From positions 124,001-188,000 of the IMG/VR virus record IMGVR_UViG_3300023174_000036: a DNA stretch of 64,000 nt. One strand, 5' to 3'. Under the pieces are notes generated by a model. That model saw only the letters and a list, made by a program, of their open reading frames with translations. It was not told the DNA's origin and made no database searches. How positions within the stretch are numbered: position 1 is the first letter of the stretch; each line of letters opens with the position of its first letter. This document shows, piece by piece, positions 15,975 to 35,664 of the stretch. A program made the position numbers and the translations under genes.

Positions 15975-16417
15975 TCTACCTCTGCTTTGCCATCGGCAAG
16001 TTTTGTTACATTAATATATCCAGCACCTACACGTCCGGGATCGGCTACTCCAGCTTCGCCCAACATGTTTCTTGCCAAATCTCTAAACCAACGATCTACA
16101 ATTTCTTCATCAGGATCTCCATCGTAGCCGTATCCTGCACGTTTTAATTCTAGCACAAATATCTCATTCCAGTCAAGCTCAAAAAAACCGTTACGGATAT
16201 TATCTTTGTTTACATGAGTGTCCAGCACAGCTACCCACGGCTCGCCTTTGGCAGTAGCACGTTCTTTTGGTGTTAGTTTAGCTTGAGCTTCTAATTCTTG
16301 AGCTTTGGTTGTTTCTGCTTGTGCTAGAGCCAGTGCTTCTTGCGCTTGAGTTTTTTCAGCTTCAAGTTTATCAATACCAAATAATCGTTTGATTAATTTT
16401 TTCATCAAGTTCCCCAC
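15971..16417 (-). CDS. hypothetical protein
   Basis: Packed ORF with FFELDWN motif. Confidence 0.65.
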   Translation of the reverse strand: MGNLMKKLIKRLFGIDKLEAEKTQAQEALALAQAETTKAQELEAQAKLTPKERATAKGEPWVAVLDTHVNKDNIRNGFFELDWNEIFVLELKRAGYGYDGDPDEEIVDRWFRDLARNMLGEAGVADPGRVGAGYINVTKLADGKAEVE

Positions 16418-17262
16418 TCGTTTTTAAACAACGGCACTTGTAGTCTATCGCTGTAGCGCAAGCCATTTTTCATAGCAAGTTCTGCAACACGGCGATTGTT
16501 CAAAGTATAAACGCTTTCAACACCACCAACAGGCATTAAGTATACTGGACCAGTAAATCCATTTTCTCTATAAATGTCTGCGGTTTCAATTGCTTCTTCT
16601 GCATCTTCTTCAGTTGCAACAACAAATTTCAAATATACATAACCCACATCTTGATAGTCATTAACAACTTCGGGTTTAATAGCTTCGTGTCTTGCCTCAC
16701 CACTGCAACTTAATTTGGCACTAACACTAAATGTCACACACCGTTCACCAGGCATACGCATGGTCCAATCCTGCAAGTATTCTTTAAATTCGGGTGTTAA
16801 TGGTTGAGTTCCATTGGTTTCAAAAGTAATTTCCTTTAACTGATTCATATAAACATGATCCAGTAAATCAGGATAAGCACGTTGCCAACCCAACAACGGT
16901 TCACCGCCAGTAATAACCAAATGCTCGTCGACCCATGTTTTATGTGGAAGTATTTCTACAATCTGTTCTGCAATGCCATCTGTTTCCATCAAAGGGCTTA
17001 GGTCTTTAAAACGTGGATCCCAACTTGCATAACTATCACACCCTGTACTTACTAATGGTAAGTCGTTGTAAGTTTTAAATTCTGCAATGCGTTCTGCAAT
17101 TGGTTCTATTTCATTACTTAGTTGACCTTTAGGCATGCCAAATCCAGAACATTTAAAGTTACAACCAAATGTACGTAGAAACACCGACGGGACGCCCATA
17201 TAGCGTCCTTCTCCTTGAATTGAATAAAACAATTCAGCAACTTTTAATTTACTCATACACAA
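16405..17262 (-). CDS. queE: 7-carboxy-7-deazaguanine synthase (radical SAM)
   Basis: ELFYSIQGEG, FLRTFGCNFKC...CDS split CxxxCxxC, ITGGEP, FETNGT, QVPLF. Confidence 0.9.
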   Translation of the reverse strand: MCMSKLKVAELFYSIQGEGRYMGVPSVFLRTFGCNFKCSGFGMPKGQLSNEIEPIAERIAEFKTYNDLPLVSTGCDSYASWDPRFKDLSPLMETDGIAEQIVEILPHKTWVDEHLVITGGEPLLGWQRAYPDLLDHVYMNQLKEITFETNGTQPLTPEFKEYLQDWTMRMPGERCVTFSVSAKLSCSGEARHEAIKPEVVNDYQDVGYVYLKFVVATEEDAEEAIETADIYRENGFTGPVYLMPVGGVESVYTLNNRRVAELAMKNGLRYSDRLQVPLFKNEWGT

Positions 17263-18144: not shown

Positions 18145-18338
18145 TCGTCTACCATTTCTTCTGCTTCCGCTTGCGTAAGTGCAGGCACAAATAATCGAGC
18201 AGGTTGTCCTATTGTATGTTGTATATTAAATCTAACAATACCACCAGGTATGCTATTAAAATCTCGTTCAACTACAAACTCTTTTAGATTTTTTGCACGA
18301 TGTATTAATTGATTAGTTAAATCTTGGGCTGTTGTCAT
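18120..18338 (-). CDS. hypothetical protein
   Basis: ATGA-coupled to folE. Confidence 0.55.
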   Translation of the reverse strand: MTTAQDLTNQLIHRAKNLKEFVVERDFNSIPGGIVRFNIQHTIGQPARLFVPALTQAEAEEMVDEWFEEDVE

Positions 18339-19171
18339 CTTGGGGCAAACTCCTGTTGCATTTTAATATTGTCAAAAAATTCTTTCTTCGCTCCAGGGTC
18401 AGTCTTAAATGTACCTTGTAGCACCGTAGTCTGTGTAAGACTTGAGTGTGCCATAATTCCACGATTCTCACAACACCCATGTATAGCCTGAATATATACG
18501 CCTAAGTTTTCAGCGCCTGTGGCTTTTTGGATCTCTCTAGCAATGTCATTACAAAGTTCCTCCTGGAGAGTACCTCTACGGGCACACCACTGGGCGATAC
18601 GTGTGTACTTGCTGAGTCCGATGAGTTTCTCAGCCGCAATAATACCAATATAAGCAACGCCAGTAACGGGTTGGTGATGATGGCTACACATACTGCGAAG
18701 CTCGCTACGAACAACCAGCATACCTTCGTAGCGATCCTTCGTATCGTTTGGAAATGCTGTTGCGTCTGGTGCTGGTTCATATCTACCTGCCATTATTTCA
18801 TTAAAGTACATCTTGGCAAGTCTACGTGCTGTGCCTTTTGAGTTTGGATCGTTTTCTCGATCAATAAGCAATCGATCGAGCACTAGTTCAAATGCTTCTG
18901 TTGCCTCGTCAATTAGTTTTTCTTTATCGCCTTCGTGAAGATAATCACTGATATTATCTCCAGCCCAAAACCGTTTTTTATCGCGTTTCATTTTAAAACG
19001 AAGATGATCGCCGAGGTATGCTTCTTGATATCCGCCATCTCCAGCCATAGCGTCTAGTGCTGTTTCTTTTTTAATATATACAGGCTTACCTAGTGGCTCG
19101 TATTTGTCCTCAATAAATTCTCGACCATCGGGGGCGTTCATTACCGGATCTGTTTTAAATTCTCTAGTCAT
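18335..19171 (-). CDS. folE: GTP cyclohydrolase I
   Basis: SMCSHHHQP, IGLSKY.RI, QEEL, HGCCENRG. Confidence 0.93.
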   Translation of the reverse strand: MTREFKTDPVMNAPDGREFIEDKYEPLGKPVYIKKETALDAMAGDGGYQEAYLGDHLRFKMKRDKKRFWAGDNISDYLHEGDKEKLIDEATEAFELVLDRLLIDRENDPNSKGTARRLAKMYFNEIMAGRYEPAPDATAFPNDTKDRYEGMLVVRSELRSMCSHHHQPVTGVAYIGIIAAEKLIGLSKYTRIAQWCARRGTLQEELCNDIAREIQKATGAENLGVYIQAIHGCCENRGIMAHSSLTQTTVLQGTFKTDPGAKKEFFDNIKMQQEFAPR

Positions 19172-20331: not shown

Positions 20332-20592
20332 TTACTTGTTTGTACCAATTCGTAAGCCTGTTATGCTTCCAAATAGTAAGAAAAATGCACACCATGTTTC
20401 TACTGTTAATGGTATCTGCAACACAGGAAATAGTGTGTTTAAGCTCCATATTCCTACAATGGGGCCAAACACAACAACAATCACAATTAGTGCAATGCCT
20501 AAAATTAATTTAATAAATGCTGATGTCATAACCAAAAATCCTCCCAAGGATAAACTAACCAACAATCTTCTTCTGCTTTGTTTACAGTCCAT
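20332..20592 (-). CDS. small membrane protein
   Basis: Two hydrophobic segments; likely start MTSAFIK. Confidence 0.55.
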   Translation of the reverse strand: MDCKQSRRRLLVSLSLGGFLVMTSAFIKLILGIALIVIVVVFGPIVGIWSLNTLFPVLQIPLTVETWCAFFLLFGSITGLRIGTNK

Positions 20593-21017
20593 ACATAATA
20601 GTCTGGATCTTTAAACTGACTTGATTGATTGTGTGTTAAAACTGCAAACCGAACATTATCTCCCCAGATGCCTTCCCATTTAGGATCGTCGGAAAAACAA
20701 CCACTTGGCCAATCTTGTTTAATCCAATTAACAGTGGATCCTTGATCGTTAATATCATCGACTATAAGAATCTTTTTACCGTTAAATGCATCTTCGGCCA
20801 TACCCAAATTACTAACACAATCGCCGCCGTCTCGAAGACTAACATCTAAACTGTTCATTTTAGTGCCAGTATATTGACTAAGCAAATTAGCAGGAACAAG
20901 TCCACCTCTAGTAATGCCTACTATATAATCCGGACGCCAATAATGAACGTGCATCTGCCTAGCAATTTCTAAACATGCACCTTCTACTTGTTGCCAAGTA
21001 TAATGAATTTTTTTCAC
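20526..21017 (-). CDS. type I phosphoribosyltransferase
   Basis: IVGITRGGLVPA, ILIVDDINDQGST PRPP-binding motif, WLVYPWE. Confidence 0.9.
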   Translation of the reverse strand: MKKIHYTWQQVEGACLEIARQMHVHYWRPDYIVGITRGGLVPANLLSQYTGTKMNSLDVSLRDGGDCVSNLGMAEDAFNGKKILIVDDINDQGSTVNWIKQDWPSGCFSDDPKWEGIWGDNVRFAVLTHNQSSQFKDPDYYVWTVNKAEEDCWLVYPWEDFWL

Positions 21018-22087: not shown

Positions 22088-22475
22088 AGTGATCTGTTAC
22101 TAGTTTATAAGTTGTTACAAATTTTTCGTAGGCTATCTTTAATCCAGGATATTCTTCACACATTTTTTCAATACGTTTAAAATCAGGAAAACAATTGACC
22201 CACTCTTCCGGAAAATTTATTGTAAACGAAGAAGTATCTATGCTAGTTATTGCACCAAGTTGTGCAGTAGTCAATCCTGCAATTTGTGTAGTAGTAATTG
22301 TTGAAATCGATGAACTACTATAATAACTAGGATAAGATACTACACAAGGATTATAACCAGTTAATGTAATAGTATCACTGTTATATGTATTGTGACAGTT
22401 TATACCACTTAAATCAATAGTGTACGTATCATTTAATGTTATCGATGAGTCCGGTTGCTGAGAAGAACTGCTCAT
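22053..22475 (-). CDS. hypothetical protein
   Basis: Ser/Thr-rich, C-terminal MCEEYPGLKIAYEKF. Confidence 0.6.
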   Translation of the reverse strand: MSSSSQQPDSSITLNDTYTIDLSGINCHNTYNSDTITLTGYNPCVVSYPSYYSSSSISTITTTQIAGLTTAQLGAITSIDTSSFTINFPEEWVNCFPDFKRIEKMCEEYPGLKIAYEKFVTTYKLVTDHYDTPKDKRPKP

Positions 22476-23541
22476 GTAATGCCTCCGTTTGTTTATGTAT
22501 AGACGGAATCATATGCGTGTAGTTATCCATATATTGGATTATCTTTGCGCATAAATTTGGTCTATATGTTGTGTAGGACTCAAAATTTTCAGTCCATTCA
22601 CTAGGATATTTAAATGTATCAAAGTACATTTCAGTATAACTAAGTCTATCAGGCACTAGTGGTATAGCATCAACTACTGCACCTTCGTAGCAACTAATGC
22701 CTAAAGTTTCTTGTAAGTTAGCACTAAACACCATCTTTGCTTCGCCTAACAAGTTATGATATTCATTTTTTGTTAGATATTGATCTTGGCAAACTACAAA
22801 TTCGTATTGTGGTAAATGAGTAGCGAGATCTCTAAAAATTTCAACTTGTTTTTCTGGAGCAATCCTGTGCGGAAATAAAATTAAGTCACGCTTAGGCATA
22901 CCCTTGTACGGTAACAAAGTATCGTGCATATATTCCATGGGCCAACCAGTACGTATAATTTTAGTATACTCGCCGGCTAGTATCTCACTCAGTTCCTCTT
23001 CATACCAGGGATTTTCTGTTTGGAACCCGCCATTAAGTAATTCCCTATGAAATAACTCAATATGAAAATTGGTAGCAAAATAGTTGTGATCAAATGCGTG
23101 GAAGAAACTTTTCTCCGCATTACGTACCCAAGGTTTGCCTCCAACAAGACGTCCTAGGAAATCTTGAGGATCATAACTGCCAGCATGCCATAAGCCATGT
23201 AAGGTCCAGTTAAAGCCTAATAGGTCCGACATATATTTCAGTTGGATCACAGTGGGGTTCCACGCATCTGTAAAGATAAAGTGATCGTCGGGACTGGTCT
23301 TGCCTTGATTGTGCTGTTCCAAGAACGCACACATTTGAGCACTCTTCCAATAGTTAGTATCGGAGAAGTTTAAGAACGCACCCGGAGTCAGTTGGCTGTT
23401 CTTCTGAACACCATCTACTTGAACCACATTAAACTTGTCGCCTAACTTGTTCTTGAGTAGTGCTGGCACATGACTGTGCCACTGTGCTGTATAGCGAGTC
23501 TCAATGGGCTCCAGTGAGAATATCCATATTGTTGATTTCAA
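22429..23541 (-). CDS. GT-B fold glycosyltransferase-like protein (TTG start)
   Basis: FPHRIAPEKQ and LQETLGISCYEG resemble GT4 nucleotide-sugar binding motifs; AGGAG RBS. Confidence 0.7.
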   Translation of the reverse strand: MKSTIWIFSLEPIETRYTAQWHSHVPALLKNKLGDKFNVVQVDGVQKNSQLTPGAFLNFSDTNYWKSAQMCAFLEQHNQGKTSPDDHFIFTDAWNPTVIQLKYMSDLLGFNWTLHGLWHAGSYDPQDFLGRLVGGKPWVRNAEKSFFHAFDHNYFATNFHIELFHRELLNGGFQTENPWYEEELSEILAGEYTKIIRTGWPMEYMHDTLLPYKGMPKRDLILFPHRIAPEKQVEIFRDLATHLPQYEFVVCQDQYLTKNEYHNLLGEAKMVFSANLQETLGISCYEGAVVDAIPLVPDRLSYTEMYFDTFKYPSEWTENFESYTTYRPNLCAKIIQYMDNYTHMIPSIHKQTEALHEQFFSATGLIDNIK

Positions 23542-24831: not shown

Positions 24832-24990
24832 TCAACTCCCGACTGTTAATCGTTTAGTCACCTTGCTATACCTTAGCCAAACGATTTTTGATCCATAACG
24901 GAACCTAAATCCAAGGCTACTTTTATCACCGATCGGATAAAAGTTAAAACCATTGCGGATCACTCCGCCTTCCTCTGTGATATGTATCAT
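24832..24990 (-). CDS. 52 aa hypothetical protein (not in ORF track)
   Basis: MIHITEEGGVIRNGFNFYPIG...VGS; ATGA overlap with endonuclease stop, ends in junction repeat. Confidence 0.55.
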   Translation of the reverse strand: MIHITEEGGVIRNGFNFYPIGDKSSLGFRFRYGSKIVWLRYSKVTKRLTVGS

Positions 24991-25587
24991 TTCTTTTCCT
25001 TACAGTTATCAAAGTGGTATCTCTTCATACCGCTAACTCCGCCTTGTTTAGCACAGTGAGGACAAACAAGTACAGGTTGTAGTGTTCCTTTCAGCGAAGT
25101 AGAAACACCCAATCTACCAGAAGGCAATCCCTTCCTACGCTTATTTGATTCTGATATATGTGGAGCAGGACCAGTTGCCTTGCCCTTGTTCCAAGGTGTT
25201 ATACCTTTCTTATGGATAGCATTGGCTTTACTTGTACTGGGCATTTTAACTCCAGCAGGAGCACCATCTAATCCATTCTCCGGAATCATATTAGCCCATA
25301 CTTTCTTGCCACGGGAATCTACAGCATCTACTATGTTATGGAATTCACTAAAGAATGTAGCAAACTCTACCAACTGATCCATGTCAGTAAATTCTTCACA
25401 CCATACAGTTGTGATATCTTCGCTGTGTTCTTTTAAGTGTCTCAACCAATACTTACCAGAACCCAAATAGGTCTGTGGGTCCTTGGTAGTCTTGCCAAAG
25501 TATCGTAGTCCAGTGGTATTGTGTTGCTTGATATAAAGCCAGGTTGGCTTAAATTCCGGTGATGGAATATTACTATAAATATTCATG
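24987..25587 (-). mobile_element. GIY-YIG (Seg-like) homing endonuclease gene with NUMOD3-like repeats
   Basis: WLYIKQHNTTGLRYFGKT, YLGSGKYW, PWNKGK, ISESNK, C-terminal CPHC...HFDNC; likely start MNIYSN at 25587 behind AGGA. Confidence 0.8.
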
Positions 25588-25649
25588 CTGATAGTTCCTA
25601 ATAAACTGTTAGAGTCAGTGGATGTTGGTAGCATCGCGACTGGCACTTT

Positions 25650-25657
25650 TATTTATA
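25650..25657 (-). promoter_or_regulatory. canonical T4 late promoter TATAAATA driving the endonuclease
   Basis: Exact TATAAATA overlapping the stop codon of the truncated GT fragment. Confidence 0.7.
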
Positions 25658-25928
25658 CAGAACAGTTAGAAAGAATAAGACTGTCGCCGGAATGAACGGC
25701 TCCGTTACAAAATAAACGGCCCATTTGCTCAACCTGACTAGCCTTGTATATATTGGTACCACCAAAATTAAGGAAAGCACCAGGAGTAGTGGCTGTAGGA
25801 ATATCCTCAGGGCCAGAGATAATTTGAACATGGTGTCCTGCCTTTTTAAGAAGTTTAGGCACATGGGATTTCCATTGTCCCGTGTACCGTGTTTCAACAG
25901 CTTCTAGATCAATTATGAATATGTTCAT
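25653..25928 (-). pseudogene. orphan N-terminal fragment of a glycosyltransferase homologous to 22429..23541
   Basis: LEAVETRYTGQWKSHVPKLL and TPGAFLNFGGTN match LEPIETRYTAQWHSHVPALL and TPGAFLNFSDTN; frame ends after about 82 homologous residues. Confidence 0.8.
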
Positions 25929-26173
25929 TGGTTTCTGTTAACAAACGGACGATTGCCTTGATAAGGTTTTTTCTCGCCGGTCCATGCTTTCTTTGGACGC
26001 TTGCTCTTTTCGTAGTTGCGCCACACCCAACTTTCTCTATTGTACAAGTCGGCTTCGTTGTAAGGGAACAATTCAATCCTACAGAAGTTAAGAAAAGATT
26101 CTAGTTCATCGAAAATCTTAACGATATCCGGGCGAGTTTCAAAATAATTGATGTCTTTGTAATTCTTAGCCAT
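25925..26173 (-). CDS. hypothetical protein
   Basis: AAGGA RBS, ATGA-coupled to GT fragment. Confidence 0.65.
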   Translation of the reverse strand: MAKNYKDINYFETRPDIVKIFDELESFLNFCRIELFPYNEADLYNRESWVWRNYEKSKRPKKAWTGEKKPYQGNRPFVNRNQ

Positions 26174-26184
26174 TGTAGCTTTCC

Positions 26185-26589
26185 TTAGTACTTAATAAAT
26201 GAACCATTTTCTCCGTCTTCGGAGACTTCAATCCAGACCTCACGGTCTGGATACTTTTGTGAAATAGTGTCGTACAATTCGTCCGACATCATTTCGCAAC
26301 TCTTGTGATCTAGCGACAAAACACCTTGTGTGCTAGAATACAGTTGTTCAAGCCATCGCTTGAATTGTATGAATTCCACATCTCGGTCATTGTGGGTAAC
26401 ACTAAGCCATACCCTAAAATGAAAGATGTGACGATGAGGATAACCCAGAAACGATACATCATATTCATCTCCTGTAGCTAAGTTAGGGTTTGTTAATGCC
26501 GCTGGGTATTTGTGAATACCCTCCTTACGAAATGTAACCCAAATCATTTTGTTAGGGCGGATGTCTTGTTTAATAATCATTTTAGTCAA
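26185..26589 (-). CDS. QueD-like T-fold protein (DpdL-like candidate)
   Basis: FLGYPHRHIFHFRV, DVEFI.FK, SCEMM, EVSEDGENG; lacks the CxxxHGH of canonical QueD. Confidence 0.65.
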   Translation of the reverse strand: MTKMIIKQDIRPNKMIWVTFRKEGIHKYPAALTNPNLATGDEYDVSFLGYPHRHIFHFRVWLSVTHNDRDVEFIQFKRWLEQLYSSTQGVLSLDHKSCEMMSDELYDTISQKYPDREVWIEVSEDGENGSFIKY

Positions 26590-27130
26590 AGAACCTTTCT
26601 CTAGATTGAGATGTACGAGAGATGCTTATAATTTTTTTCATAGATTTAACTGGAATTCTAATCCTAACAGAATTTTCATGGCCCCAGCAATCTCCAACTA
26701 GATACTTATTAGGTCCATAAATGTCTTTAGAAGAATTGCCTTGCAATACTTGTTTGGCAATATAATTATAGTCTTGTTCAAATTTTTCTTGTATTTCGTT
26801 ATCAGTCATATCAACATTTATAGGTTCTTTAGTAATCCTAAAAATTGGATCTGTTAAAACTACTTCTTGTTTCTGAACTTTTTTATAGATATCAGTTTTA
26901 TTCCACGGCAAAGTTTTTATATTATCTATAGTTATAGAACCTTGAGAGTACGACGAATTGCTGTATATACTATGACTTTTTATTTCAGTACCTTCTGTTG
27001 GCATATCTACAGGCCCAACACGATCTATAATATTTCCTGCTTTTTCGTATGCGTCTTCGATAAATCGACCGTCAGAGCCGTCATTTCTTTTTTTTGGTAG
27101 CAGTGTTCCTGCCGGTATACGTTTAATCAT
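26582..27130 (-). CDS. PD-(D/E)XK nuclease-like protein
   Basis: GRFIE...G...GPVDM...TEIKS spacing like MutH/NaeI-type nucleases; start moved to MIKRIP at 27130. Confidence 0.45.
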   Translation of the reverse strand: MIKRIPAGTLLPKKRNDGSDGRFIEDAYEKAGNIIDRVGPVDMPTEGTEIKSHSIYSNSSYSQGSITIDNIKTLPWNKTDIYKKVQKQEVVLTDPIFRITKEPINVDMTDNEIQEKFEQDYNYIAKQVLQGNSSKDIYGPNKYLVGDCWGHENSVRIRIPVKSMKKIISISRTSQSRERFFD

Positions 27131-27666
27131 AATGTTGTATCTTGTGTGTACTGATCCCAATGAGTATACTTGTCTTTACTCATTAAGCTCTGTAGGTGAT
27201 GTGTCCACACACCTGGATTTGTAGCACCCCAAGTTCGGTCGTCCAGTTTAAGTGTGGCATTATAGTTGAGTTGATTAATGTAAGGTAACTTGACACTAAT
27301 CATAGGGACAAAGCGAGGATATTCGTTATAAGCAGATTCCAATACACCTTCAATGTGTTCAACACCGAAGTCCAATGAAACCCAATAGTCGGCTTTAAGG
27401 CAACCAATAATAACTTCATCCCACGCTTTATATTCTTCTTGCGAGATAGATTTGGGATTAAAACTTTGACTAGTGCCAAAGTAAATGTGTTTAATGCGTT
27501 TAGACTCGTCTAACAGTGCTTGAGTGTCGTCTGCCTTACGCAAAATTTCTTCAAGTGGAGGAGTGCCCACTACAAATAGTGTAAACATACCATAACAAAT
27601 AGTATGCTCGACTTCATAACCTGTAAAGTATACGACGTCTTGTCGTTCTTCAGTGTTTAGTCCCAT
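27127..27666 (-). CDS. conserved-looking hypothetical protein in modification cluster
   Basis: FTGYEVEHT, HIYFGTSQSF, KLDD...ATNPGVW. Confidence 0.65.
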   Translation of the reverse strand: MGLNTEERQDVVYFTGYEVEHTICYGMFTLFVVGTPPLEEILRKADDTQALLDESKRIKHIYFGTSQSFNPKSISQEEYKAWDEVIIGCLKADYWVSLDFGVEHIEGVLESAYNEYPRFVPMISVKLPYINQLNYNATLKLDDRTWGATNPGVWTHHLQSLMSKDKYTHWDQYTQDTTL

Positions 27667-28547
27667 TTGATATAACCTCTGCTGTAACCGTTTGGACGAT
27701 CCTTACCATCCGCAAACGCTTGTTGCCACTCTATGTTTCTATTATAACCTCTAGTCCAAAAAGAATCAACCTCAAGTTCACCGTTTTCAATCATCCAACG
27801 TGCTTGATGCATGGCTGTGATAAATCGAGACGTTCTTGGACTAGGTTTAACTGTGGTAACAGCTTTCCAAAGTTGCTGTTGTGCTTCTTCTTTGGTTACT
27901 GCTTTACCAACGGCATCTATAATTAGTGCTTCGTTATTTAGGTTAATATCTGTACCTATATCATATTTTCCTGATAAGTCCACGACAATGTCATAACTTT
28001 CACTGGTCCACAATAACAAAGTGTCTCCCCAGAGATCTATGTTATTAGATCCCAATGCGTCAACATCCATATCTGGAAAATGATGTTTTAAATTATTAAA
28101 AACAACCCAAGCAAGAAATCCGCTACCTAAGATCAAACATTTACCTTTGGATCTGCGTTCAAATTCTTCGTATGCTTGACTAACACAATTAATACCACAA
28201 GCAACTGGTTCTAAAATATATTTTGGATGTGCTTCTGGAACTTGTACATATTCATTGGCACGTACATTATAAAAGTCTGCGTATGCTGGTTCACCCCGAG
28301 TAGCAACAAAGTCGCCTTTTGCAAGACCAGTGACACCAGCACCCATTTCAATTACTTGACCCAAGCCTTCGTGTCCTTGCATACTAAGTGGCAATGGTCC
28401 AAAATTACCTTGCATCATATCAATGTCGCTACGACATACGCCTGTCATGATAGCTTGTACACGAATATCAGTAGGCCCTAGTGGAGGCAATTCATAGGTT
28501 ACTTCTTCAAAGTAACCTTGACCTGTAGTTTGCAAACAGCGTGTCAT
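27657..28547 (-). CDS. Zn-dependent alcohol dehydrogenase (MDR) family protein
   Basis: GVCRSD, GHEGLG, LEPVAC, LILGSGFL. Confidence 0.85.
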   Translation of the reverse strand: MTRCLQTTGQGYFEEVTYELPPLGPTDIRVQAIMTGVCRSDIDMMQGNFGPLPLSMQGHEGLGQVIEMGAGVTGLAKGDFVATRGEPAYADFYNVRANEYVQVPEAHPKYILEPVACGINCVSQAYEEFERRSKGKCLILGSGFLAWVVFNNLKHHFPDMDVDALGSNNIDLWGDTLLLWTSESYDIVVDLSGKYDIGTDINLNNEALIIDAVGKAVTKEEAQQQLWKAVTTVKPSPRTSRFITAMHQARWMIENGELEVDSFWTRGYNRNIEWQQAFADGKDRPNGYSRGYIKWD

Positions 28548-29428
28548 AGATTTTCGATCCTTTCATGGATCCACGAATCTTGTTTATATTGCTCAAGCCA
28601 AAAAGTCTGATTATCTATATTTTTAATAGCATCAGAAATCATATTCTGATAAGCATATTCTGGACAAAGGCCTAACTCAACAGTAATCACGCTGTCGTCT
28701 TCCATAACAAATTCGATATTTCTTTTATCAGATTTTAAATCTCGCCAATCAGCAGTTAGTTGCCATTTGTCTGTAAAATTAATTTGACAAAAATCATCTA
28801 CATCATACGTGCCATTAACATTAACAGTTCCGTAATCTGTGCCAGTCAATTGACCCAGTGTCCACCTTTTAAATGCAGTTTGCTTAGTCAAGTTAGCTCT
28901 AATCCAGTCTGGTGCCAATGCTATGAACCAACTTAACAAGTGAGGCATTAAATCTCTACTAACACCACCAAATGCCAGTTCTTTATTAGTAAACCAACTA
29001 CCTGGATTTGGTATACGATCTTTGTTAATCCAATTAAGATTAACTTTTTTAGATTTATTTGCTAAATCTTTTAGCTCAACAATGTTGTCTCGCCACATAT
29101 TATTTTTGACCATCATAAAACGTGTAAACGGTCTGGTCTTAATCATACCAGTCCAGTCGTTACTTGTTTTGAATCCTGGCTTTTCAACAAACACTATTTT
29201 AGTATAAGGTGCTACCTGTTCGGCTATGTCTTTATGCGTAAAATTTGGCGTACAAATATGTGCAGTATCAAAAATACTATATTTTCTAATAGCATCTGCA
29301 ACACTAGTAAACTCAGCACCTTTGGAAGGATCCATATCTACTGTAATAACTGTGTGCCCAATATTTTCTAGGACAGTCTTGTATAACTGTCCAATACCCA
29401 TACCGATAACGAGACTACGCTTGTTCAT
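28544..29428 (-). CDS. Gfo/Idh/MocA family oxidoreductase
   Basis: VIGMGIG Rossmann, ICTPNFTH, VEKP, GGVSRDLMPH. Confidence 0.85.
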   Translation of the reverse strand: MNKRSLVIGMGIGQLYKTVLENIGHTVITVDMDPSKGAEFTSVADAIRKYSIFDTAHICTPNFTHKDIAEQVAPYTKIVFVEKPGFKTSNDWTGMIKTRPFTRFMMVKNNMWRDNIVELKDLANKSKKVNLNWINKDRIPNPGSWFTNKELAFGGVSRDLMPHLLSWFIALAPDWIRANLTKQTAFKRWTLGQLTGTDYGTVNVNGTYDVDDFCQINFTDKWQLTADWRDLKSDKRNIEFVMEDDSVITVELGLCPEYAYQNMISDAIKNIDNQTFWLEQYKQDSWIHERIENL

Positions 29429-29697: not shown

Positions 29698-31431
29698 TTA
29701 TTCGTGTACACTAGCTTCTAATTCGTCTAGTTTGTTATCATCAAATTCAAGGTCGTCTTCTAATTGTACAATATCTTCTTGGACTTCTTCAAAGAATTTG
29801 GAGTACATAGTTGATGCATTAACTGTTTTCTTACCAGTTGCGCCACGTGTACCAGGTATAGCTTGCCAAAATTTATCATAATAATCAATAATTGCCATTG
29901 CTGAATCTCTATCTGGCGCACTAAAGATAGCGTCTACAACATCTCTAAATTTATTTGGTAACGGAGAGTAATCTGTAAATGGTTTTGGTATAGCTGTAGT
30001 AACATCTAACATGCCAGGACATAACCCAGCATCATATTGACGATTGGCTTCTTGTACGCTGTTCAAATGTAGCCACACATTATGACCCATCATAATAGCA
30101 TAGGTAAAACTATCCCAACTTGTTTTACCAACTTTACCGATTTTGTTTACATCGTTAGGACCATAGATGCAAATGTCTTTAACTTCCACACCGTCCATTA
30201 GCGGACTAGTAGTAAACGATTTAAAATGACCATCTTGCACAACCACATCTTGGAACAGTCTAGTGTCTTTGCTGTACTTTTTGTTGTCTAAACTTGGCAA
30301 CATACGGTAGAGCCATTTTTCTCTATCTGTAATTTCTGTTTGAACATAAATTTGTCCATTAGCTGTAGCAAGAAAAGGACTAGCACAATCAAAACTAATT
30401 GTAAAACTGGGATTATGATATTTTCGAATAGCACGTTGTATATCTGTCAGCAACAACGCCCATTCTAATTTACTTGTTCCAAGAAAGTGCATCCAGTCTT
30501 GATGACCTTGTTCTAACAAACCGTCAAACTTTAATGCAACAAGTCTACGCAGTACTAGATCTACGTCACACATATTCTGCCCACCCATGGCCCAGCCATT
30601 AAATGGCTTGTCATATTTCTTTGGGTCGCAAAAGTCTTTCATTTGTTGATACCAGTCTTCTGCTTGGTCGTGGTTTTCGCCTTGTAATACATTTAAGAAT
30701 TTACAAGCGCCTGTGCGATGTTTGATAAAATATTCGTTATTATATTTGGTAGCCGCGACAGCTTGTGGATAATTACCAACGCCGCTATTTTTAGCACCAA
30801 CAGGACTTCGACCAACCCATGCTGGAATATCTAGCACCATGCCATAATCCATTAGTGCATCCATCCATGCTAGTACTTGTTCACGTTTTTTCTGTGCCGC
30901 ATCTAATTGTGCTTGATACAGTTTAACATGATCAATCTTAGTATACTTAGGATTACCGTTTTTATCTGTCTTAGGATGACCTGTTGGGTGTAATTGAGGA
31001 ACTAGTTCAACACCTTTGGCAACGGCTTCGGCCATACGTTGTGCTACTACTGGACCGTTAGGATCATTCCATTCGCCTGCCCATACGCCTTTACCAATCT
31101 GGAAACCTCCAGAGTCGCCTAACACCCAACTAGTGCTACGGTCTCTGTTACGAAACATGTCTTCACTAGGATCTGGTTTAGTCAAATCTAAGTTAGCATG
31201 ACCAGCAGAATACAAACAATGGTCAAAGTAAAATGCCGCATTGGGATTCAAATAGTTCATAGCTTCAATGCCCATAGGCCCAAAGCTAGCAGGAATACGT
31301 GCAGGATCCACGTAGTTGCTATATCTCTGTTTACCTATATATGTACTATAGAATCCTGAAGTTGCCGGCAAAAAGTAAGCATACGGTTCACCAGAGGCAT
31401 CAAATTGTGCTTTCGTTAGATTTTTATTCAT
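29698..31431 (-). CDS. dpdA: DpdA-like DNA guanine transglycosylase (TGT fold)
   Basis: LGDSGGFQ, MVLDIP, NVLQG, AMGG, HFLGTS, SFDCASP TGT motifs; no C-terminal Zn cluster of tRNA TGT; queE/folE context. Confidence 0.8.
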   Translation of the reverse strand: MNKNLTKAQFDASGEPYAYFLPATSGFYSTYIGKQRYSNYVDPARIPASFGPMGIEAMNYLNPNAAFYFDHCLYSAGHANLDLTKPDPSEDMFRNRDRSTSWVLGDSGGFQIGKGVWAGEWNDPNGPVVAQRMAEAVAKGVELVPQLHPTGHPKTDKNGNPKYTKIDHVKLYQAQLDAAQKKREQVLAWMDALMDYGMVLDIPAWVGRSPVGAKNSGVGNYPQAVAATKYNNEYFIKHRTGACKFLNVLQGENHDQAEDWYQQMKDFCDPKKYDKPFNGWAMGGQNMCDVDLVLRRLVALKFDGLLEQGHQDWMHFLGTSKLEWALLLTDIQRAIRKYHNPSFTISFDCASPFLATANGQIYVQTEITDREKWLYRMLPSLDNKKYSKDTRLFQDVVVQDGHFKSFTTSPLMDGVEVKDICIYGPNDVNKIGKVGKTSWDSFTYAIMMGHNVWLHLNSVQEANRQYDAGLCPGMLDVTTAIPKPFTDYSPLPNKFRDVVDAIFSAPDRDSAMAIIDYYDKFWQAIPGTRGATGKKTVNASTMYSKFFEEVQEDIVQLEDDLEFDDNKLDELEASVHE

Positions 31432-32182: not shown

Positions 32183-32211
32183 ATTATACTTAGGTTTTTT
32201 GATTATGTCAA
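32183..32211 (-). promoter_or_regulatory. perfect sigma70 promoter for clamp-dpdA operon
   Basis: TTGACA-17-TATAAT. Confidence 0.8.
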
Positions 32212-32981
32212 GCATTTTTTCTTACCGTTTCATTGTATTCCGCCGAAGCTTCTAAAATACTAAACGGTGCATTGATAGTTTTGGCATATTTTATAAATGC
32301 TTGAGTGTCTTTAGGAAAACACGCACCACCAAAACCACGTTCCCCATCAAGCCCAGGTACTAAGGTATGACTGGAACCAATTCTTTGATCATGTGTAATC
32401 ATTTGACGCACTATTGAATAGTCTGCACCATTTGCCTCACATATATCAAACAGTTGATTAAAAAAGGCTACTTTTGCCGCTAGGAAAGAGTTTATACTGT
32501 ACTTGGTCATAGCCGCTTCTAATTTAGTACATTGAAAAAACAGTTTACAATTAGGCAATACTGAACTAAAAGTCTCCTGCCAAAATCCTTCAGGATCTTC
32601 ACCGCCAATAATCATAAACTTTTGTTCGGCAAAGTCCTTAGCAGAAGTAGCCGCCCGTAAAAATTCTGGACTATACACAACGGAATGATCTTTATATACA
32701 TCATCGAATGCTTCCAGCGCACTAGGTGTTACAGTGCTTTTAATCATTACCGGCATAAAAATTGGCACTGTATCTAAAATATCAGCGATGTTTCGGACAT
32801 CACATATGCCATCTTCTGTGGTAGGAGTATTCACACAGATAATTAATCCGTCTGCATCTGGATGATCTTTTATTTGTTCTTCGGTATATTTTGGATCAAC
32901 AATTACAATTTCGTGTTTAGTTTGTAATGTTTGTCCAACTGCTTTGCCAACAAATCCGTATCCTGCAATTATAATTTTCAT
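32208..32981 (-). CDS. UDP-glucose/GDP-mannose dehydrogenase family protein (short form)
   Basis: IAGYGFVG, ICVNTP, IKSTV, SPEFL, TKYSINSFLA.K, FGGACFPKD; start moved to MKIII at 32981. Confidence 0.85.
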   Translation of the reverse strand: MKIIIAGYGFVGKAVGQTLQTKHEIVIVDPKYTEEQIKDHPDADGLIICVNTPTTEDGICDVRNIADILDTVPIFMPVMIKSTVTPSALEAFDDVYKDHSVVYSPEFLRAATSAKDFAEQKFMIIGGEDPEGFWQETFSSVLPNCKLFFQCTKLEAAMTKYSINSFLAAKVAFFNQLFDICEANGADYSIVRQMITHDQRIGSSHTLVPGLDGERGFGGACFPKDTQAFIKYAKTINAPFSILEASAEYNETVRKNA

Positions 32982-32982
32982 A

Positions 32983-35664
32983 TTAGAACTCGAAAAAACT
33001 GTTAAAGGTATTCTTTTCTTCTGTGCTGTTGATATCCCAGTTAAGAACACCAATTAAGTTGTCTAATTTATTATCAATAATTGTCTGTTCCATTTCGGCA
33101 TGATCAAATGCTAAATCTTTAAACCACTGCGGAAGTCGCAACTCGTCTACCGGATAAGCAACACTAGTAAAACCTAGTGCATTAGGTTTTAGTTTACATA
33201 CAATAACTTTAGCACCGTCTGTAATAGCCATGCTATACTTGTCTCCGTACATGCGTTTTAATGTGTTCCAATTAATACTTGCACGAACGTGACCAGGCAT
33301 ATTAGTCTTGCCAGCTTTGGCTTCTTTGGCTTGGTAGTCTGTAATGTTGTTGGCACGTTTTGGACTGCCTTTTTCCCAACCGGGACGAGCTTTAAATCGA
33401 ATTCTAAATTCACTAATATGATCCAATACTTGTTGTTCAGTTGCACCTGTCAATACTAGTTCAAGTACATCACTTAAAAAGTTTTGAATAAATTCAGGCG
33501 TGTCACTACGCTTGAGGTCCAACCCCATGGCTTTAATTTTGCCGGGTTTACCTTCAACGTCTGTACGTTTGCCTTCTTTGTCGTAATACAACACAGCATA
33601 ACGCTTCTTGGTAATAAACAAACTTTTACTACCAACAATCTCACGACCTGCTTTGATAACTTCTCCACGCGACTTGGGCACGTGAAACGAATCCAACATA
33701 AACTGTGGAAATGTACTGTTAACTTCCTCACCAATTTGGTCGTACAACTGAACAACTGATTCTTTAGTCCACGGCAACTGCCCTGCATTGATTTCTTTTT
33801 CCAATGTTTTATATGCTGAGAAATAACATGAGTCTGTATCACCGTAGATAATAGCTTTGCCTGTGTGATTGTATTCACCCGCAATAATCTCATTAACTTT
33901 ACTGGCCATGTGTTTAGCAATAGCACGACCTGTTAGTGTAGTTGATTGTCCGATACGCTTGTCAAAGAATCTACAACCGTTGTTAAGAATAGCACCATAC
34001 AAACTGTTCAAGTTAATTTTCTTGACTAGTTGTCGTTTGTCCCAGTATTCTTCTTCAACCTTATTGCCGGCTTTGATAGCTTCTTTAAGTTTAGCCTGCA
34101 TCTCTTTACGTTCAGCATACCAACGCTTTAACAAGCCAGGAATAATACCTTCTTTTTCATACGTGAAAATTGTGCCGTTGGCACTGAGGATCCACGGCTG
34201 GTTGCTTTCGTAAATTAATCTATACACTTCTGCGGCACTGACAACATCAGTGTCGCCGTTCTCCCAGTCAATAGTAATGTCTGTGCCAATTTCTTGATTT
34301 ATCACAGCAGTATACTCTAATGATCCAAACACACCTTCCCATGCCGCCGCAAAACTCTTACCTTTTGCTACAAGATTATCAATGTATTCTTGCGTAAGTG
34401 TTTGACGTAACTGCCCTACAATGGTCTCTGGCCCCATGTTAAGTGCTCTAATAGCACTAGGATACAGTGAGTTAATGTCTAGTGAACCGATCCAATCATG
34501 GATGCCTTCTTTAGGATAAGCAACATACGCACCTGCGGCCCCCTCGTTGCCTTCTCTGTCGTCCATTTTAGTTCTGTTGGGAACTTGGAAACCTCTGCGG
34601 TGTGCTTCGTTAATAATAGCCTGCTCAGTCACAGCCACAGCACCCATTGTAGTCTGTAACAACACAGTACATTCATGTGCCAGCGTGTTAGCAAGGTCCA
34701 TGAATTTTAATTTCTTGTCTAATTTTTCAAGAAGCATACAGTCATTGATGTTGTATTCAATGAAAGTTCTAAAATCATTGTTGTACAACTGATCCAATGT
34801 GCCTTCGTATTGCGTCTTACGCTCACCTAGTTCGTATTCAGCAATAGCATCCAGTCGATAGGTATGACGTTCTTCATAAGTATACTTTCGATACAGTTCA
34901 AGACTATCCAAGTGTACACGACCAATAAAGTCGTATGTAACAGCTTGTCTTCCATATTTTTCATATTCACGTTTCTTTGGCAATTGGTCAAACAAACAAA
35001 AACGTCTTGTATCTTCTTTGCTTAATGCCTTGGTCACACGATTAACCGTGTAGGGAATATCAAAGCCTTCGCTGTTCCAACCACTCAGTACATCAGCATC
35101 TTTGATCAAATCCAAGAACACATCCAACATCTCTGCTTCTGTTTCATACAGCATTACGTTGTCAAAGTCTTTGACCATTTCTTTGGCATCCGCCATGTTG
35201 AGTTTCTTGGGTGGCACAGCCAAACATATCATTGTTTCCATCCATTGTAGGTAAACAGCAATCGCAGTGATTGGCATAAATGCATCATCGGGTGACGCAT
35301 AGCCACGCTCTGGGTCGAAGTCTACTTCAATATCGAAAAATGCTACATTTAGTTTGGGAGGTTCTGCGTTTAGATAGTTTTCGCTTAGACAAACAAAGAT
35401 GGGGTTAATGTCTGCTTCAAACAGTTTTTTGCTTGAATTAATAGCTTGTTCTTTTCTTAGCTCTTTGGTATTTTTACAAATAATACGTGTGAGTGGATCA
35501 CCGTAAATACTTTGAAATTTGCCCTTGGGGTCTTTAAAGTAAAACGTGTGTTTGACAGGAATGTCACGGAACTCACGTTCTTGTTTTTTATTACGTTCGA
35601 CCACTTTAATAACGTCATTCTCGCGGTCAAACCATGCGTCTACATAGCTCAATATATTCTCCAT
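32983..35664 (-). CDS. family B DNA polymerase (T4 gp43-like)
   Basis: FFDIEV exonuclease, DINSLYPS, KINLNSLYG, YGDTDS, KKRY; true start may be TTG 35652. Confidence 0.97.
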   Translation of the reverse strand: MENILSYVDAWFDRENDVIKVVERNKKQEREFRDIPVKHTFYFKDPKGKFQSIYGDPLTRIICKNTKELRKEQAINSSKKLFEADINPIFVCLSENYLNAEPPKLNVAFFDIEVDFDPERGYASPDDAFMPITAIAVYLQWMETMICLAVPPKKLNMADAKEMVKDFDNVMLYETEAEMLDVFLDLIKDADVLSGWNSEGFDIPYTVNRVTKALSKEDTRRFCLFDQLPKKREYEKYGRQAVTYDFIGRVHLDSLELYRKYTYEERHTYRLDAIAEYELGERKTQYEGTLDQLYNNDFRTFIEYNINDCMLLEKLDKKLKFMDLANTLAHECTVLLQTTMGAVAVTEQAIINEAHRRGFQVPNRTKMDDREGNEGAAGAYVAYPKEGIHDWIGSLDINSLYPSAIRALNMGPETIVGQLRQTLTQEYIDNLVAKGKSFAAAWEGVFGSLEYTAVINQEIGTDITIDWENGDTDVVSAAEVYRLIYESNQPWILSANGTIFTYEKEGIIPGLLKRWYAERKEMQAKLKEAIKAGNKVEEEYWDKRQLVKKINLNSLYGAILNNGCRFFDKRIGQSTTLTGRAIAKHMASKVNEIIAGEYNHTGKAIIYGDTDSCYFSAYKTLEKEINAGQLPWTKESVVQLYDQIGEEVNSTFPQFMLDSFHVPKSRGEVIKAGREIVGSKSLFITKKRYAVLYYDKEGKRTDVEGKPGKIKAMGLDLKRSDTPEFIQNFLSDVLELVLTGATEQQVLDHISEFRIRFKARPGWEKGSPKRANNITDYQAKEAKAGKTNMPGHVRASINWNTLKRMYGDKYSMAITDGAKVIVCKLKPNALGFTSVAYPVDELRLPQWFKDLAFDHAEMEQTIIDNKLDNLIGVLNWDINSTEEKNTFNSFFEF

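What the first reader, a model, noticed from the sequence alone, without database searches (positions are those of the whole stretch)
26185..26589. QueD paralog with LxxxHRHxF instead of CxxxHGH: possible CDG decarboxylase (DpdL-like)
The T-fold protein lacks the catalytic Cys motif of canonical QueD and has LGYPHRHIF. As I recall, the predicted 7-carboxy-7-deazaguanine decarboxylase DpdL was defined by such a motif; this needs verification. With no queC in the window, the base could be CDG or unsubstituted 7-deazaguanine, and a CDG carboxyl would be a plausible handle for sugar attachment.
Basis: partly seen in the sequence, partly recalled or inferred. Interest (0 to 1): 0.6.

Follow-up and report, generated by a model that had tools for sequence, protein, structure and literature searches.

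The report
DpdL-type QueD paralog in jumbo phage
This small phage gene belongs to the DpdL family, QueD-like enzymes predicted but never shown to strip the carboxyl group from a queuosine precursor so that 7-deazaguanine can replace guanine in phage DNA. Here it sits in a conserved operon with a glycosyltransferase, which hints at a further sugar decoration.

Summary
Pfam, NCBIfam and HMMER profiles do not link it to QueD. A high-confidence AlphaFold model (pLDDT 96) does: it matches PTPS/QueD T-fold structures best (Z 12.6-13.2).

It is 55% identical to Acidovorax phage ACP17 DpdL and 32% to Cellulophaga phage phiST DpdL.

The 356-kb phage genome has FolE, QueE, QueD and a TGT-motif DpdA-like protein but no QueC, which is the published DpdL context.

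The gene is a new member of a known but biochemically unproven family. CDG decarboxylation remains the best inference.

New here:
- The family is large, with 2069 clusters at 50% identity.
- In 8 of 14 phage lineages DpdL lies within 4 kb of one GT4-like glycosyltransferase family.
- It occurs fused to LmbE/PIG-L-like, YhhQ-like and "protein X" domains.

So the final base in this lineage may be more than plain 7-deazaguanine.

The parts
26185..26580 (-). dpdL: 131-aa QueD/PTPS-fold protein carrying LGYPHRHIF. Conserved H23, H49 and H51 are the putative Zn site. S94-C95-E96 and E121-D122 are also conserved.
26582..27160 (-). 192-aa ORF inserted between protein X and dpdL. Present in only 3 of 77 relatives and has no family match. 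Probably a mobile insertion; a nuclease-like D..E-x-K pattern was seen by eye only.
27127..27666 (-). Protein X: 179 aa of unknown function with a G-x-EVE...TLF motif. It lies immediately upstream of dpdL in relatives, and homologs are fused to DpdL in P0183 and P0184.
   Evidence: fold unresolved
29698..31431 (-). DpdA-like DNA-guanine transglycosylase candidate, 577 aa. TGT motifs are DSGGFQ 106-111, LQGE, GWAMGG, HFLGTS and ISFDCASPF.
   Evidence: no Pfam or PDB HMM hit
22429..23541 (-). GT4-like GT-B glycosyltransferase, 370 aa, with an E-x7-E motif. The same family lies within 4 kb of dpdL in 8 of 14 lineages.
25653..25928 (-). 91-aa N-terminal remnant of a second copy of the same glycosyltransferase. 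It sits where relatives have their single full-length copy.
24987..25646 (-). 219-aa ORF found in none of 67 relatives, directly after the glycosyltransferase remnant. Suspected homing endonuclease, by eye only; no family hit.
25925..26173 (-). 82-aa conserved ORF between dpdL and the glycosyltransferase (71 of 76 relatives). Function unknown.
18335..19171 (-). FolE, GTP cyclohydrolase I.
16405..17262 (-). QueE-like radical-SAM CDG synthase.
   Evidence: PHROG 2076, E 5e-55
20526..21017 (-). Xanthine/guanine-type phosphoribosyltransferase. Homologs lie in the deazaguanine gene clusters of PA5oct and cyanophage BUCT-ZZ01 (adjacent to QueE in the latter).
27657..29428 (-). Two oxidoreductase genes between dpdA and X: an MDR/ADH-like gene (27657-28547) and a GFO/IDH/MocA-like gene (28544-29428). 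Present in 17 of about 73 relatives. Candidate sugar-tailoring enzymes.
32208..33053 (-). Short (281 aa) NDP-sugar dehydrogenase, UDP-glucose dehydrogenase-like. Present in 25 of 65 relatives.

Best explanation
The gene encodes a DpdL-family enzyme: a QueD/PTPS-type T-fold protein that keeps the three-histidine metal site and the pterin/purine-anchoring glutamate but has Leu in place of QueD's catalytic Cys.

Proposed pathway:
1. The phage's FolE, QueD and QueE make 7-carboxy-7-deazaguanine (CDG) from GTP.
2. No QueC exists to take CDG on to preQ0.
3. DpdL binds CDG with its 2-amino-4-oxo edge on E96 and its 7-carboxylate at the metal site, and removes CO2 to give 7-deazaguanine.
4. The DpdA-like transglycosylase (29698-31431) exchanges that base for guanine in phage DNA, which shields the DNA from restriction.

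What is shown: family membership, fold, residue conservation and pathway context.

What is inferred: the substrate, the decarboxylation chemistry and the insertion step.
For: - Homology to the two published DpdLs.
- PTPS/QueD fold at Z 12.6-13.2.
- Profile alignment puts L45/H49/R50/H51 on QueD C27/H31/G32/H33.
- In 76 representatives at 50% identity, H23, H49, H51, L45, F53, R66, E69, S94-C95-E96 and E121-D122 are kept in 74-76 of 76, and R50 in 70 of 76.
- FolE, QueE and QueD are present and QueC is absent from the genome.
- QueC is absent from 10 of 12 other DpdL phages; D479 and BUDD give only partial matches (one above, one below the Pfam cut-off), far from dpdL.
- phiST carries DpdL but none of the accessory genes, and all its guanine is replaced by dDG (PMC10516641).
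- PA5oct, a relative with the same operon, resists G-containing restriction sites (PMC12191111).
- A fusion to a YhhQ/Vut_1 domain, the family of preQ0/preQ1 importers, ties the domain to free 7-deazapurine bases.
Against: - No DpdL has been shown to decarboxylate anything. Co-expression of phiST or ACP17 dpdL with the matching dpdA in E. coli gave no dDG.
- The DpdA-like assignment rests on motifs, a language-model lead and a weak profile-profile match (Prob 51%, E 1.5e-4).
- Tight linkage to a glycosyltransferase, protein X, PIG-L-like and PP-loop genes suggests that the chemistry in this clade is not just CDG to DG.
Confidence: 0.55

Rival explanations
1. DpdL is a decarboxylase, but it acts at the nucleotide level as in tubercidin biosynthesis. 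The cluster's phosphoribosyltransferase first joins CDG to PRPP, and DpdL then decarboxylates the 7-carboxy-7-deaza-GMP.
For: - An XPRT-like phosphoribosyltransferase sits in the cluster (20526-21017).
- It recurs in the deazaguanine clusters of PA5oct and BUCT-ZZ01.
- In tubercidin biosynthesis, TubE is CDG-specific and rejects 7-deazaguanine, and decarboxylation follows ribosylation (PMC6112128).
- This would explain why dpdL plus dpdA alone gave no dDG in E. coli.
Against: - phiST has no such phosphoribosyltransferase in its annotated cluster yet makes dDG.
- A phosphoribosyltransferase can equally be explained as salvage of the guanine that DpdA releases.
- The tubercidin decarboxylase is a UbiD-family enzyme, not a T-fold enzyme.
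- A transglycosylase needs a free base.
Confidence: 0.15
2. DpdL is not a decarboxylase in this clade. It binds or presents CDG, or another 7-deazapurine, to a sugar-linked hypermodification machinery made of a GT4-like transferase, with or without an LmbE/PIG-L deacetylase and a PP-loop ATPase. The carboxyl group is kept as an amide or ester handle.
For: - An LmbE/PIG-L-like domain is fused to DpdL in at least 8 representative clusters.
- Stand-alone PIG-L-like genes and PP-loop (PAPS_reduct) genes lie beside dpdL in BUDD, BCSR5 and SRR24079427.
- GT4 plus PIG-L plus an ATP-dependent ligase is the logic of mycothiol and bacillithiol synthesis (established knowledge).
- The glycosyltransferase family lies within 4 kb of dpdL in 8 of 14 lineages.
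Against: - The window genome has no PIG-L and no PAPS_reduct homolog.
- phiST DpdL conserves the same residues and works in a phage whose DNA carries plain dDG.
- The PIG-L assignment is weak: Pfam scores fall below the cut-off, and the PDB hits have E 0.15 and 0.74.
- Six DpdL lineages lack the glycosyltransferase genome-wide.
Confidence: 0.15
3. It is a second, functional or degenerate QueD: a CPH4 synthase, or a catalytically dead subunit or regulator of QueD.
For: QueD/PTPS is the closest fold, and the metal ligands are retained.
Against: - The Cys essential for QueD is Leu in 74 of 76 family representatives.
- A separate QueD that scores above the Pfam cut-off is encoded elsewhere in the genome.
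- Strong purifying selection and distinct invariant residues (R50, H63, R66, S-C-E) argue for a function of its own.
Confidence: 0.05

Closest known systems
DpdL of Cellulophaga phage phiST (CGPG_00067 / PhiST_gp040) and Acidovorax phage ACP17 (ASD50405), from Cui et al., NAR 2023
   Same: - Homologous over the full length: 32% and 55% identity.
- Same LxxxHRHxF signature.
- Same conserved His, Glu and S-C-E residues.
- Same context: FolE, QueD, QueE and a DpdA, without QueC.
   Different: - phiST has a short DpdA3 (259 aa) and no glycosyltransferase or protein X.
- The window has a 577-aa DpdA-like protein of the PA5oct type, protein X, a GT4-like transferase and sugar oxidoreductases in the same operon.
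- Activity is untested in all of them.
QueD, 6-carboxy-5,6,7,8-tetrahydropterin synthase (E. coli, PDB 4NTK), and PTPS
   Same: T-fold monomer (Z 12.6, rmsd 1.9 A over 109 residues). The three His metal ligands and the anchoring Glu are in equivalent positions.
   Different: - About 17% identity, with no HMM-level match.
- Catalytic Cys27 is Leu and Gly32 is Arg.
- The fourth His is displaced.
- An invariant S-C-E and R66/E69 are added.
- The genome has its own QueD.
TubF, the UbiD-family decarboxylase of tubercidin biosynthesis
   Same: Proposed to remove the 7-carboxyl group of a CDG-derived intermediate in a QueC-less pathway that also contains a phosphoribosyltransferase.
   Different: It has an unrelated fold and cofactor (prenylated FMN), acts on the ribonucleotide, and belongs to a secondary-metabolite pathway rather than a DNA-modification pathway.
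HuiG, the glycosyltransferase of huimycin biosynthesis
   Same: It is a precedent for a glycosyltransferase that uses UDP-GlcNAc to glycosylate a 7-deazapurine base (bioRxiv 10.64898/2026.04.15.718813).
   Different: It acts on a free secondary-metabolite base. No homology to the window glycosyltransferase was tested.

Membership tests
DpdL (predicted CDG decarboxylase, Cui et al. 2023) | Sequence homology to phiST CGPG_00067 and ACP17 DpdL | tested here: met
   tblastn and blastp give 55% identity to ACP17 (E 6e-44) and 32% to phiST gp040 (E 2e-14). PHROG 17812 matches at E 2.8e-33.
DpdL (predicted CDG decarboxylase, Cui et al. 2023) | Signature LxxxHRHxF in place of QueD's CxxxHGH | tested here: met
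   L45-GYP-H49-R50-H51-I-F53. hhalign maps these residues onto QueD C27/H31/G32/H33/F35. Across 76 representatives: L 74, H 75, R 70, H 76, F 75.
DpdL (predicted CDG decarboxylase, Cui et al. 2023) | QueD/PTPS T-fold | tested here: met
   AlphaFold2 pLDDT 96.3. Foldseek's top hit is 4NTK QueD. VIA-align gives Z 13.2 and 12.6 to PTPS and QueD. Sequence HMMs do not detect the relationship.
DpdL (predicted CDG decarboxylase, Cui et al. 2023) | Genome encodes FolE, QueD, QueE and a DpdA but no QueC | tested here: met
   - FolE: 132 bits.
- QueD: 53 bits, at G000 208581-209057.
- QueE: PHROG 2076, E 5e-55.
- QueC: best match 10.5 bits, inside an unrelated 758-aa ORF.
- DpdA: met only at motif and weak-profile level.
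DpdL (predicted CDG decarboxylase, Cui et al. 2023) | Converts CDG to 7-deazaguanine; dDG present in virion DNA | not testable with these tools
   No biochemical proof exists for any family member. The published heterologous test was negative.
QueD (CPH4 synthase, PF01242) | Catalytic Cys in CxxxHGH, and a score above the Pfam gathering threshold | tested here: not met
   Leu stands at the Cys position. There is no PF01242 hit at E<=10.
DpdA / TGT superfamily (for the 577-aa neighbour) | TIM-barrel transglycosylase with a DSGG(F/Y/L)Q Asp, QG, HxLG and an FD(C/S) nucleophile Asp | tested here: inconclusive
   All motifs are present and invariant in 32 homologs. hhalign to the BUDD/ACP17 DpdA-like family gives Prob 51%, E 1.5e-4 across all motifs. 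An atlas lead points to clusters carrying PF01702. There is no Pfam or PDB HMM hit, and the protein was not folded.
GT4-type GT-B glycosyltransferase (for the 370-aa neighbour) | C-terminal Glycos_transf_1 domain with an E-x7-E motif | tested here: inconclusive
   The E-x7-E motif is present. The profile hits WlaC 6eji (E 3.7e-4), GlgM 6tvp (E 9e-4) and a GT1-family protein 5i45 (E 5e-3). An atlas lead points to PF00534 clusters. The protein's own sequence has no Pfam hit.

The most novel reading that the evidence does not exclude
In this jumbo-phage lineage, and in PA5oct-, ACP17-, Phosso-, BUDD-, BCSR5- and BUCT-ZZ01-like phages, the DNA base is not plain 7-deazaguanine but a glycosylated 7-deazaguanine. 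DpdL and DpdA would install the deazapurine. The operon's dedicated GT4-like transferase would then add a sugar. In this genome the donor sugar is possibly tailored by the MDR, GFO/IDH/MocA and NDP-sugar dehydrogenase genes; in other phages it would be deacetylated by the PIG-L-like domain that is fused to DpdL.

This would be the first sugar-bearing 7-deazapurine found in DNA. It could also explain why dpdL plus dpdA alone failed in E. coli.
Probability: 0.3. Interest if true: 0.85.

Novelty: new member of a known kind. Interest (0 to 1): 0.5.

Why it matters
DpdL is the only proposed route to 7-deazaguanine DNA, and it has never been demonstrated.

This window shows that the family is abundant in uncultured jumbo phages: thousands of near-identical metagenomic copies and 2069 clusters at 50% identity.

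In most lineages DpdL travels as a fixed module of DpdA, protein X, DpdL and a GT4-like glycosyltransferase. Recurrent fusions join it to deacetylase-like, transporter-like and protein-X domains.

This yields concrete, testable reasons for the failed reconstitution, namely missing partners or the wrong substrate level. It also nominates cultured phages (PA5oct, ACP17, Phosso) in which a sugar-modified deazaguanine could be sought by mass spectrometry.

Such a base would matter for phage evasion of restriction, for defence systems that sense modified G, and for sequencing and enzymology of modified DNA.

Tried and rejected
- **Sequence-only links to QueD failed.** Pfam at E<=10, NCBIfam, and HMMER profiles of 6 and 76 DpdLs against PDB found nothing significant. 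hhalign to four phage QueDs gave only 41% probability over the C-terminal third. The relationship rests on the predicted structure and on hhalign to E. coli QueD (Prob 50%, E 1.7e-4).
- **Protein X stays unassigned.** It has no Pfam or PHROG hit. The AlphaFold2 model is only moderate (pLDDT 66.5, C-terminal third unresolved). Foldseek found nothing at E<=1e-3. VIA-align's best hits are Z 7.6 to STAS domains and about Z 6 to QueE, within the background range. No function is assigned.
- **Complex prediction for DpdL plus protein X** gave no verdict (score 0.00). It counts neither for nor against binding.
- **The DpdA-like protein** gave no Pfam TGT hit in the genome and no PDB HMM hit with 2- or 32-sequence profiles. 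hhalign to phiST DpdA3 was non-significant.
- **PIG-L assignment of the fused N-terminal domain** rests on motifs plus sub-threshold hits only.
- **A co-variation idea was rejected.** I considered that the phage QueD variant (Q...C...HGY, lacking two canonical His) co-varies with DpdL. The same variant is common in QueC-positive phages.
- **Hydroxymethyl-pyrimidine as the glycosyltransferase target:** the genome has no ThyA-family hydroxymethylase, so nothing supports it.
- **Supplementary tables of the NAR paper are not held**. I could not check which DpdA subfamily the authors assign to ACP17-type proteins, or whether PA5oct is on their list.

Full report
**Setting**

The window is bases 124001-188000 of a single 356-kb viral contig that is 96% complete by CheckV. 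Its DNA polymerase, sliding clamp and RNase H are 35-50% identical to those of the jumbo phages Pseudomonas PA5oct and Sinorhizobium Phosso. All genes discussed here are on the minus strand.

**The observation**

The ORF listing gives 26185-26589 (134 aa) from a TTG. The upstream ORF ends with TAA at 26584-26582. One base later comes an ATG at 26580. That start gives a 131-aa product, the length of nearly all called homologs.

In 131-aa numbering the protein carries L45-GYP-H49-R50-H51-I-F53. The gene is real. Among 30 gap-free IMG/VR homologs, differences fall 594/351/1513 on codon positions 1/2/3, and synonymous codon changes outnumber non-synonymous ones 1270 to 556.

**Is it a QueD paralog?**

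Sequence searches alone do not show this.
- Pfam finds nothing even at E<=10.
- NCBIfam finds nothing.
- PHROGs places it in family 17812 of unknown function (E 2.8e-33).
- HMMER profiles built from 6 or 76 family members find no QueD in PDB. The only PTPS-family hit is PH0634 at E 0.16.

The structure prediction does show it. An AlphaFold2 model from a 76-sequence alignment has pLDDT 96.3 and pTM 0.85, with a beta-beta-alpha-alpha-beta-beta T-fold layout.
- Foldseek ranks E. coli QueD (4NTK) first: E 5e-5, TM 0.66/0.71.
- VIA-align gives Z 13.2 to Pyrococcus PTPS and Z 12.6 to QueD (rmsd 1.9 A over 109 of 120 residues).
- Other T-fold enzymes fall lower: dihydroneopterin aldolase near Z 10, and QueF-like, urate oxidase and GTP cyclohydrolase I below that.

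hhalign of the family profile against E. coli QueD (Prob 50%, E 1.7e-4) aligns:

| DpdL | QueD |
|---|---|
| H23 | His16 |
| L45 | Cys27 |
| H49 | His31 |
| R50 | Gly32 |
| H51 | His33 |
| F53 | Phe35 |
| E96 | Glu86 |

E121/D122 align at or next to Glu110.

**Is it DpdL?**

Cui et al. (NAR 2023, PMC10516641) found that all guanine in phiST DNA is replaced by 2'-deoxy-7-deazaguanine. They named the QueD paralog CGPG_00067 DpdL and noted the change from CxxxHGH to LxxxHRHxF. They also noted that the gene occurs in phages with DpdA, FolE, QueD and QueE but no QueC. Finally, they reported that co-expressing phiST or ACP17 dpdL with the matching dpdA in E. coli gave no dDG.

The window protein hits exactly those genes:
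- ACP17 ASD50405, directly upstream of QueE: 55% identity.
- phiST gp040, next to the MazG-like gene: 32% identity.

The genome context also matches:
- FolE at 18335-19171.
- QueE-like at 16405-17262.
- QueD outside the window at G000 208581-209057.
- No QueC anywhere.

Of 12 other DpdL-bearing phage genomes, 10 have no QueC match. The other two, D479 and BUDD, have only partial matches far from dpdL, one above and one below the Pfam cut-off. Every membership criterion that can be tested is therefore met. Only the activity itself is untestable here, and it is unproven in the literature.

**The family**

An exhaustive search finds 2069 representatives at 50% identity with E<=1e-3. More than 8000 near-identical metagenomic proteins exist, and more than 594 IMG/VR loci.

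Conservation in 76 full-length representatives:

| Residue | Conserved in |
|---|---|
| H23 | 75 |
| L45 | 74 |
| H49 | 75 |
| R50 | 70 (Phe in PA5oct) |
| H51 | 76 |
| F53 | 75 |
| H63 | 65 |
| R66 | 75 |
| E69 | 75 |
| S94 / C95 / E96 | 76 / 74 / 76 |
| E121 / D122 | 75 / 75 |

The QueD metal site and the anchoring Glu are kept and the QueD Cys is gone. A new set of invariant residues has appeared: R50, R66, the S-C-E triplet and E-D.

CDG is the ring-contracted product of CPH4, which is QueD's own product. A QueD-derived pocket that holds the 7-carboxylate near the metal is therefore chemically reasonable. This last step is inference, not a result.

**Surroundings**

Eighty IMG/VR relatives share this order:

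DNA polymerase, (NDP-sugar dehydrogenase), clamp, DpdA-like, (98-aa ORF, GFO/IDH/MocA, MDR), protein X, DpdL, 82-aa ORF, glycosyltransferase.

Downstream come FolE, a cupin, the phosphoribosyltransferase, a HIT protein and QueE. Frequencies among those relatives:
- Protein X is present in 75 of 76, and its alignment typically runs to within a few bases of the dpdL start.
- The DpdA-like gene is present in 66 of 66.
- A glycosyltransferase matching the 91-aa remnant is present in 66 of 73, and one matching the full 370-aa copy in 47 of 53.
- The two oxidoreductases are present in only 17 of about 73.
- The NDP-sugar dehydrogenase is present in 25 of 65.

The window differs through two rare insertions.
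- A 192-aa ORF lies between X and dpdL (3 of 77 relatives).
- A 219-aa ORF (0 of 67 relatives) follows a 91-aa N-terminal remnant of the glycosyltransferase. A complete but more divergent glycosyltransferase copy lies 2 kb further on. This looks like the footprint of a mobile endonuclease, which is an inference.

*The DpdA-like protein (577 aa).* It has no Pfam or PDB HMM hit. It does carry the TGT hallmarks DSGGFQ, LQGE, GWAMGG, HFLGTS and ISFDCASPF, whose key residues are invariant or nearly so in 32 homologs. hhalign to the ACP17/BUDD family, which BUDD's annotators call queuine tRNA-ribosyltransferase, aligns most of these motifs (Prob 51%, E 1.5e-4). A language-model search points to viral clusters carrying PF01702.

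*The glycosyltransferase (370 aa).* It has an E-x7-E motif and weak profile hits to GT4 enzymes. Atlas look-alike clusters are named GT family 1, and one carries PF00534. Other annotators call its homologs glycosyltransferase or GT family 4.

**A link not discussed in the 2023 paper**

The main text of that paper contains none of the terms 'glycosyltransferase', 'glycosyl', 'sugar' or 'phosphoribosyl'.

Across 14 DpdL lineages, this one glycosyltransferase family lies within 4 kb of dpdL in 8: the window, Phosso, PA5oct, ACP17, BUDD, BCSR5, BUCT-ZZ01 and a T4-like metagenomic contig. It is absent genome-wide from phiST, RHph_I1_18, Ahp1, Bakedbeans, D479 and MA9V-3.

Conversely, only 22 of 50,697 phage records hold the glycosyltransferase family. 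Seventeen of these carry DpdL. The other five are PhiXhv-like Xanthomonas and Erwinia phages. In the one inspected (PhiXhv-15), the homolog sits in the row Gat-QueC, PIG-L deacetylase, glycosyltransferase, GFO/IDH/MocA. Wherever it was examined, then, the glycosyltransferase lies beside 7-deazaguanine genes.

Fusions among DpdL representatives point the same way:
- An LmbE/PIG-L-like domain (PHxDDE and HPDH motifs) in at least 8 clusters.
- A YhhQ/Vut_1 transporter domain in one.
- Protein X in two.
- A dUTPase/dCTP-deaminase-like domain in one.

PP-loop (PAPS_reduct) proteins and stand-alone PIG-L-like proteins flank dpdL in BUDD, BCSR5 and the metagenomic contig. The window genome has neither PIG-L nor PAPS_reduct. 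It also has no ThyA-type hydroxymethylase that could supply another glycosylation target.

**Interpretation**

Family membership is secure. The most likely function remains the published one. CDG made by FolE, QueD and QueE is decarboxylated by DpdL. The resulting 7-deazaguanine is exchanged into DNA by the DpdA-like enzyme.

phiST supports this. It has DpdL with the same conserved residues but none of the accessory genes, and its DNA carries plain dDG. PA5oct, a relative with the same operon, resists restriction at G-containing sites (PMC12191111).

I put this at about 0.55, because no DpdL activity has ever been observed. The rivals are:
- Decarboxylation at the nucleotide level after a TubE-like phosphoribosyl transfer (precedent PMC6112128).
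- A non-decarboxylating role within a sugar-linked modification that keeps the carboxyl group.
- A QueD-like or inactive role.

If DpdL is a decarboxylase, however, the handle cannot be the carboxyl group. Huimycin and dapiramicin show that glycosyltransferases can glycosylate a 7-deazapurine base.

**Verdict**

This is a correct and well-recalled call. The gene is a new member of a known but unproven family. The most novel reading that the evidence does not exclude is a glycosylated 7-deazaguanine in this widespread jumbo-phage lineage (about 0.3).

Noticed in passing
window 24987-25928 and 22429-23541: The glycosyltransferase locus looks rearranged. A 91-aa N-terminal remnant, 77% identical to the relatives' single glycosyltransferase, is followed by a 219-aa ORF found in none of 67 relatives. 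That ORF looks GIY-YIG-like by eye but has no family hit. A complete, more divergent glycosyltransferase copy (60-69% identical) lies 2 kb on. This fits partial duplication or replacement driven by a homing endonuclease.
   Followed up: partly
window 26582-27160: A 192-aa ORF is wedged between protein X and dpdL, which abut in relatives. It is present in only 3 of 77 relatives and has no family match. A nuclease-like D...E-I-K pattern was seen by eye only.
   Followed up: partly
window 32208-33053: The NDP-sugar (UDP-glucose) dehydrogenase homolog is only 281 aa. It covers the N-terminal and central domains but not the C-terminal domain. Its start overlaps the end of the DNA polymerase gene by about 70 nt.
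   Followed up: no
G000:C1:216000-267000 (outside the window): Ten radical-SAM domain hits, eight above the Pfam cut-off, cluster within about 50 kb of the same phage genome.
   Followed up: no
L107 (Xanthomonas phage PhiXhv-15) 2409-10836: A phage with no DpdL hit has this row: a GNAT/FemAB-like protein, three ORFs without a Pfam match, Gat-QueC (PF06508, E 4e-49), a PIG-L deacetylase, a homolog of the window glycosyltransferase, and a GFO/IDH/MocA oxidoreductase. This may be a sugar-linked 7-deazaguanine pathway of the QueC type.
   Followed up: partly
L003 (G000 208581-209057) and the phage QueDs in L001, L002, L015, L103, L105, L106: The phage QueDs, including this genome's, carry Q...C-x3-H-G-Y where E. 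coli QueD has H16...C27-x3-H31-G-H33. Two of the three canonical zinc histidines are therefore missing. The variant is widespread, including in QueC-positive phages, so it is not specific to DpdL phages.
   Followed up: partly
window 21632-22087: A cupin protein (PHROG 4786, 'cysteine dioxygenase'-like, E 3e-34) is conserved in 43 of 52 relatives. In some (L032) it overlaps the end of the glycosyltransferase gene. It could be an oxygenase belonging to the same pathway.
   Followed up: no
L102 7212-8363 (Vibrio phage Bakedbeans gp176) and L106 7464-8345 (Chryseobacterium phage MA9V-3): In these phages DpdL is the C-terminal domain of longer proteins (383 and 293 aa). Their N-terminal parts have no Pfam match.
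   Followed up: partly
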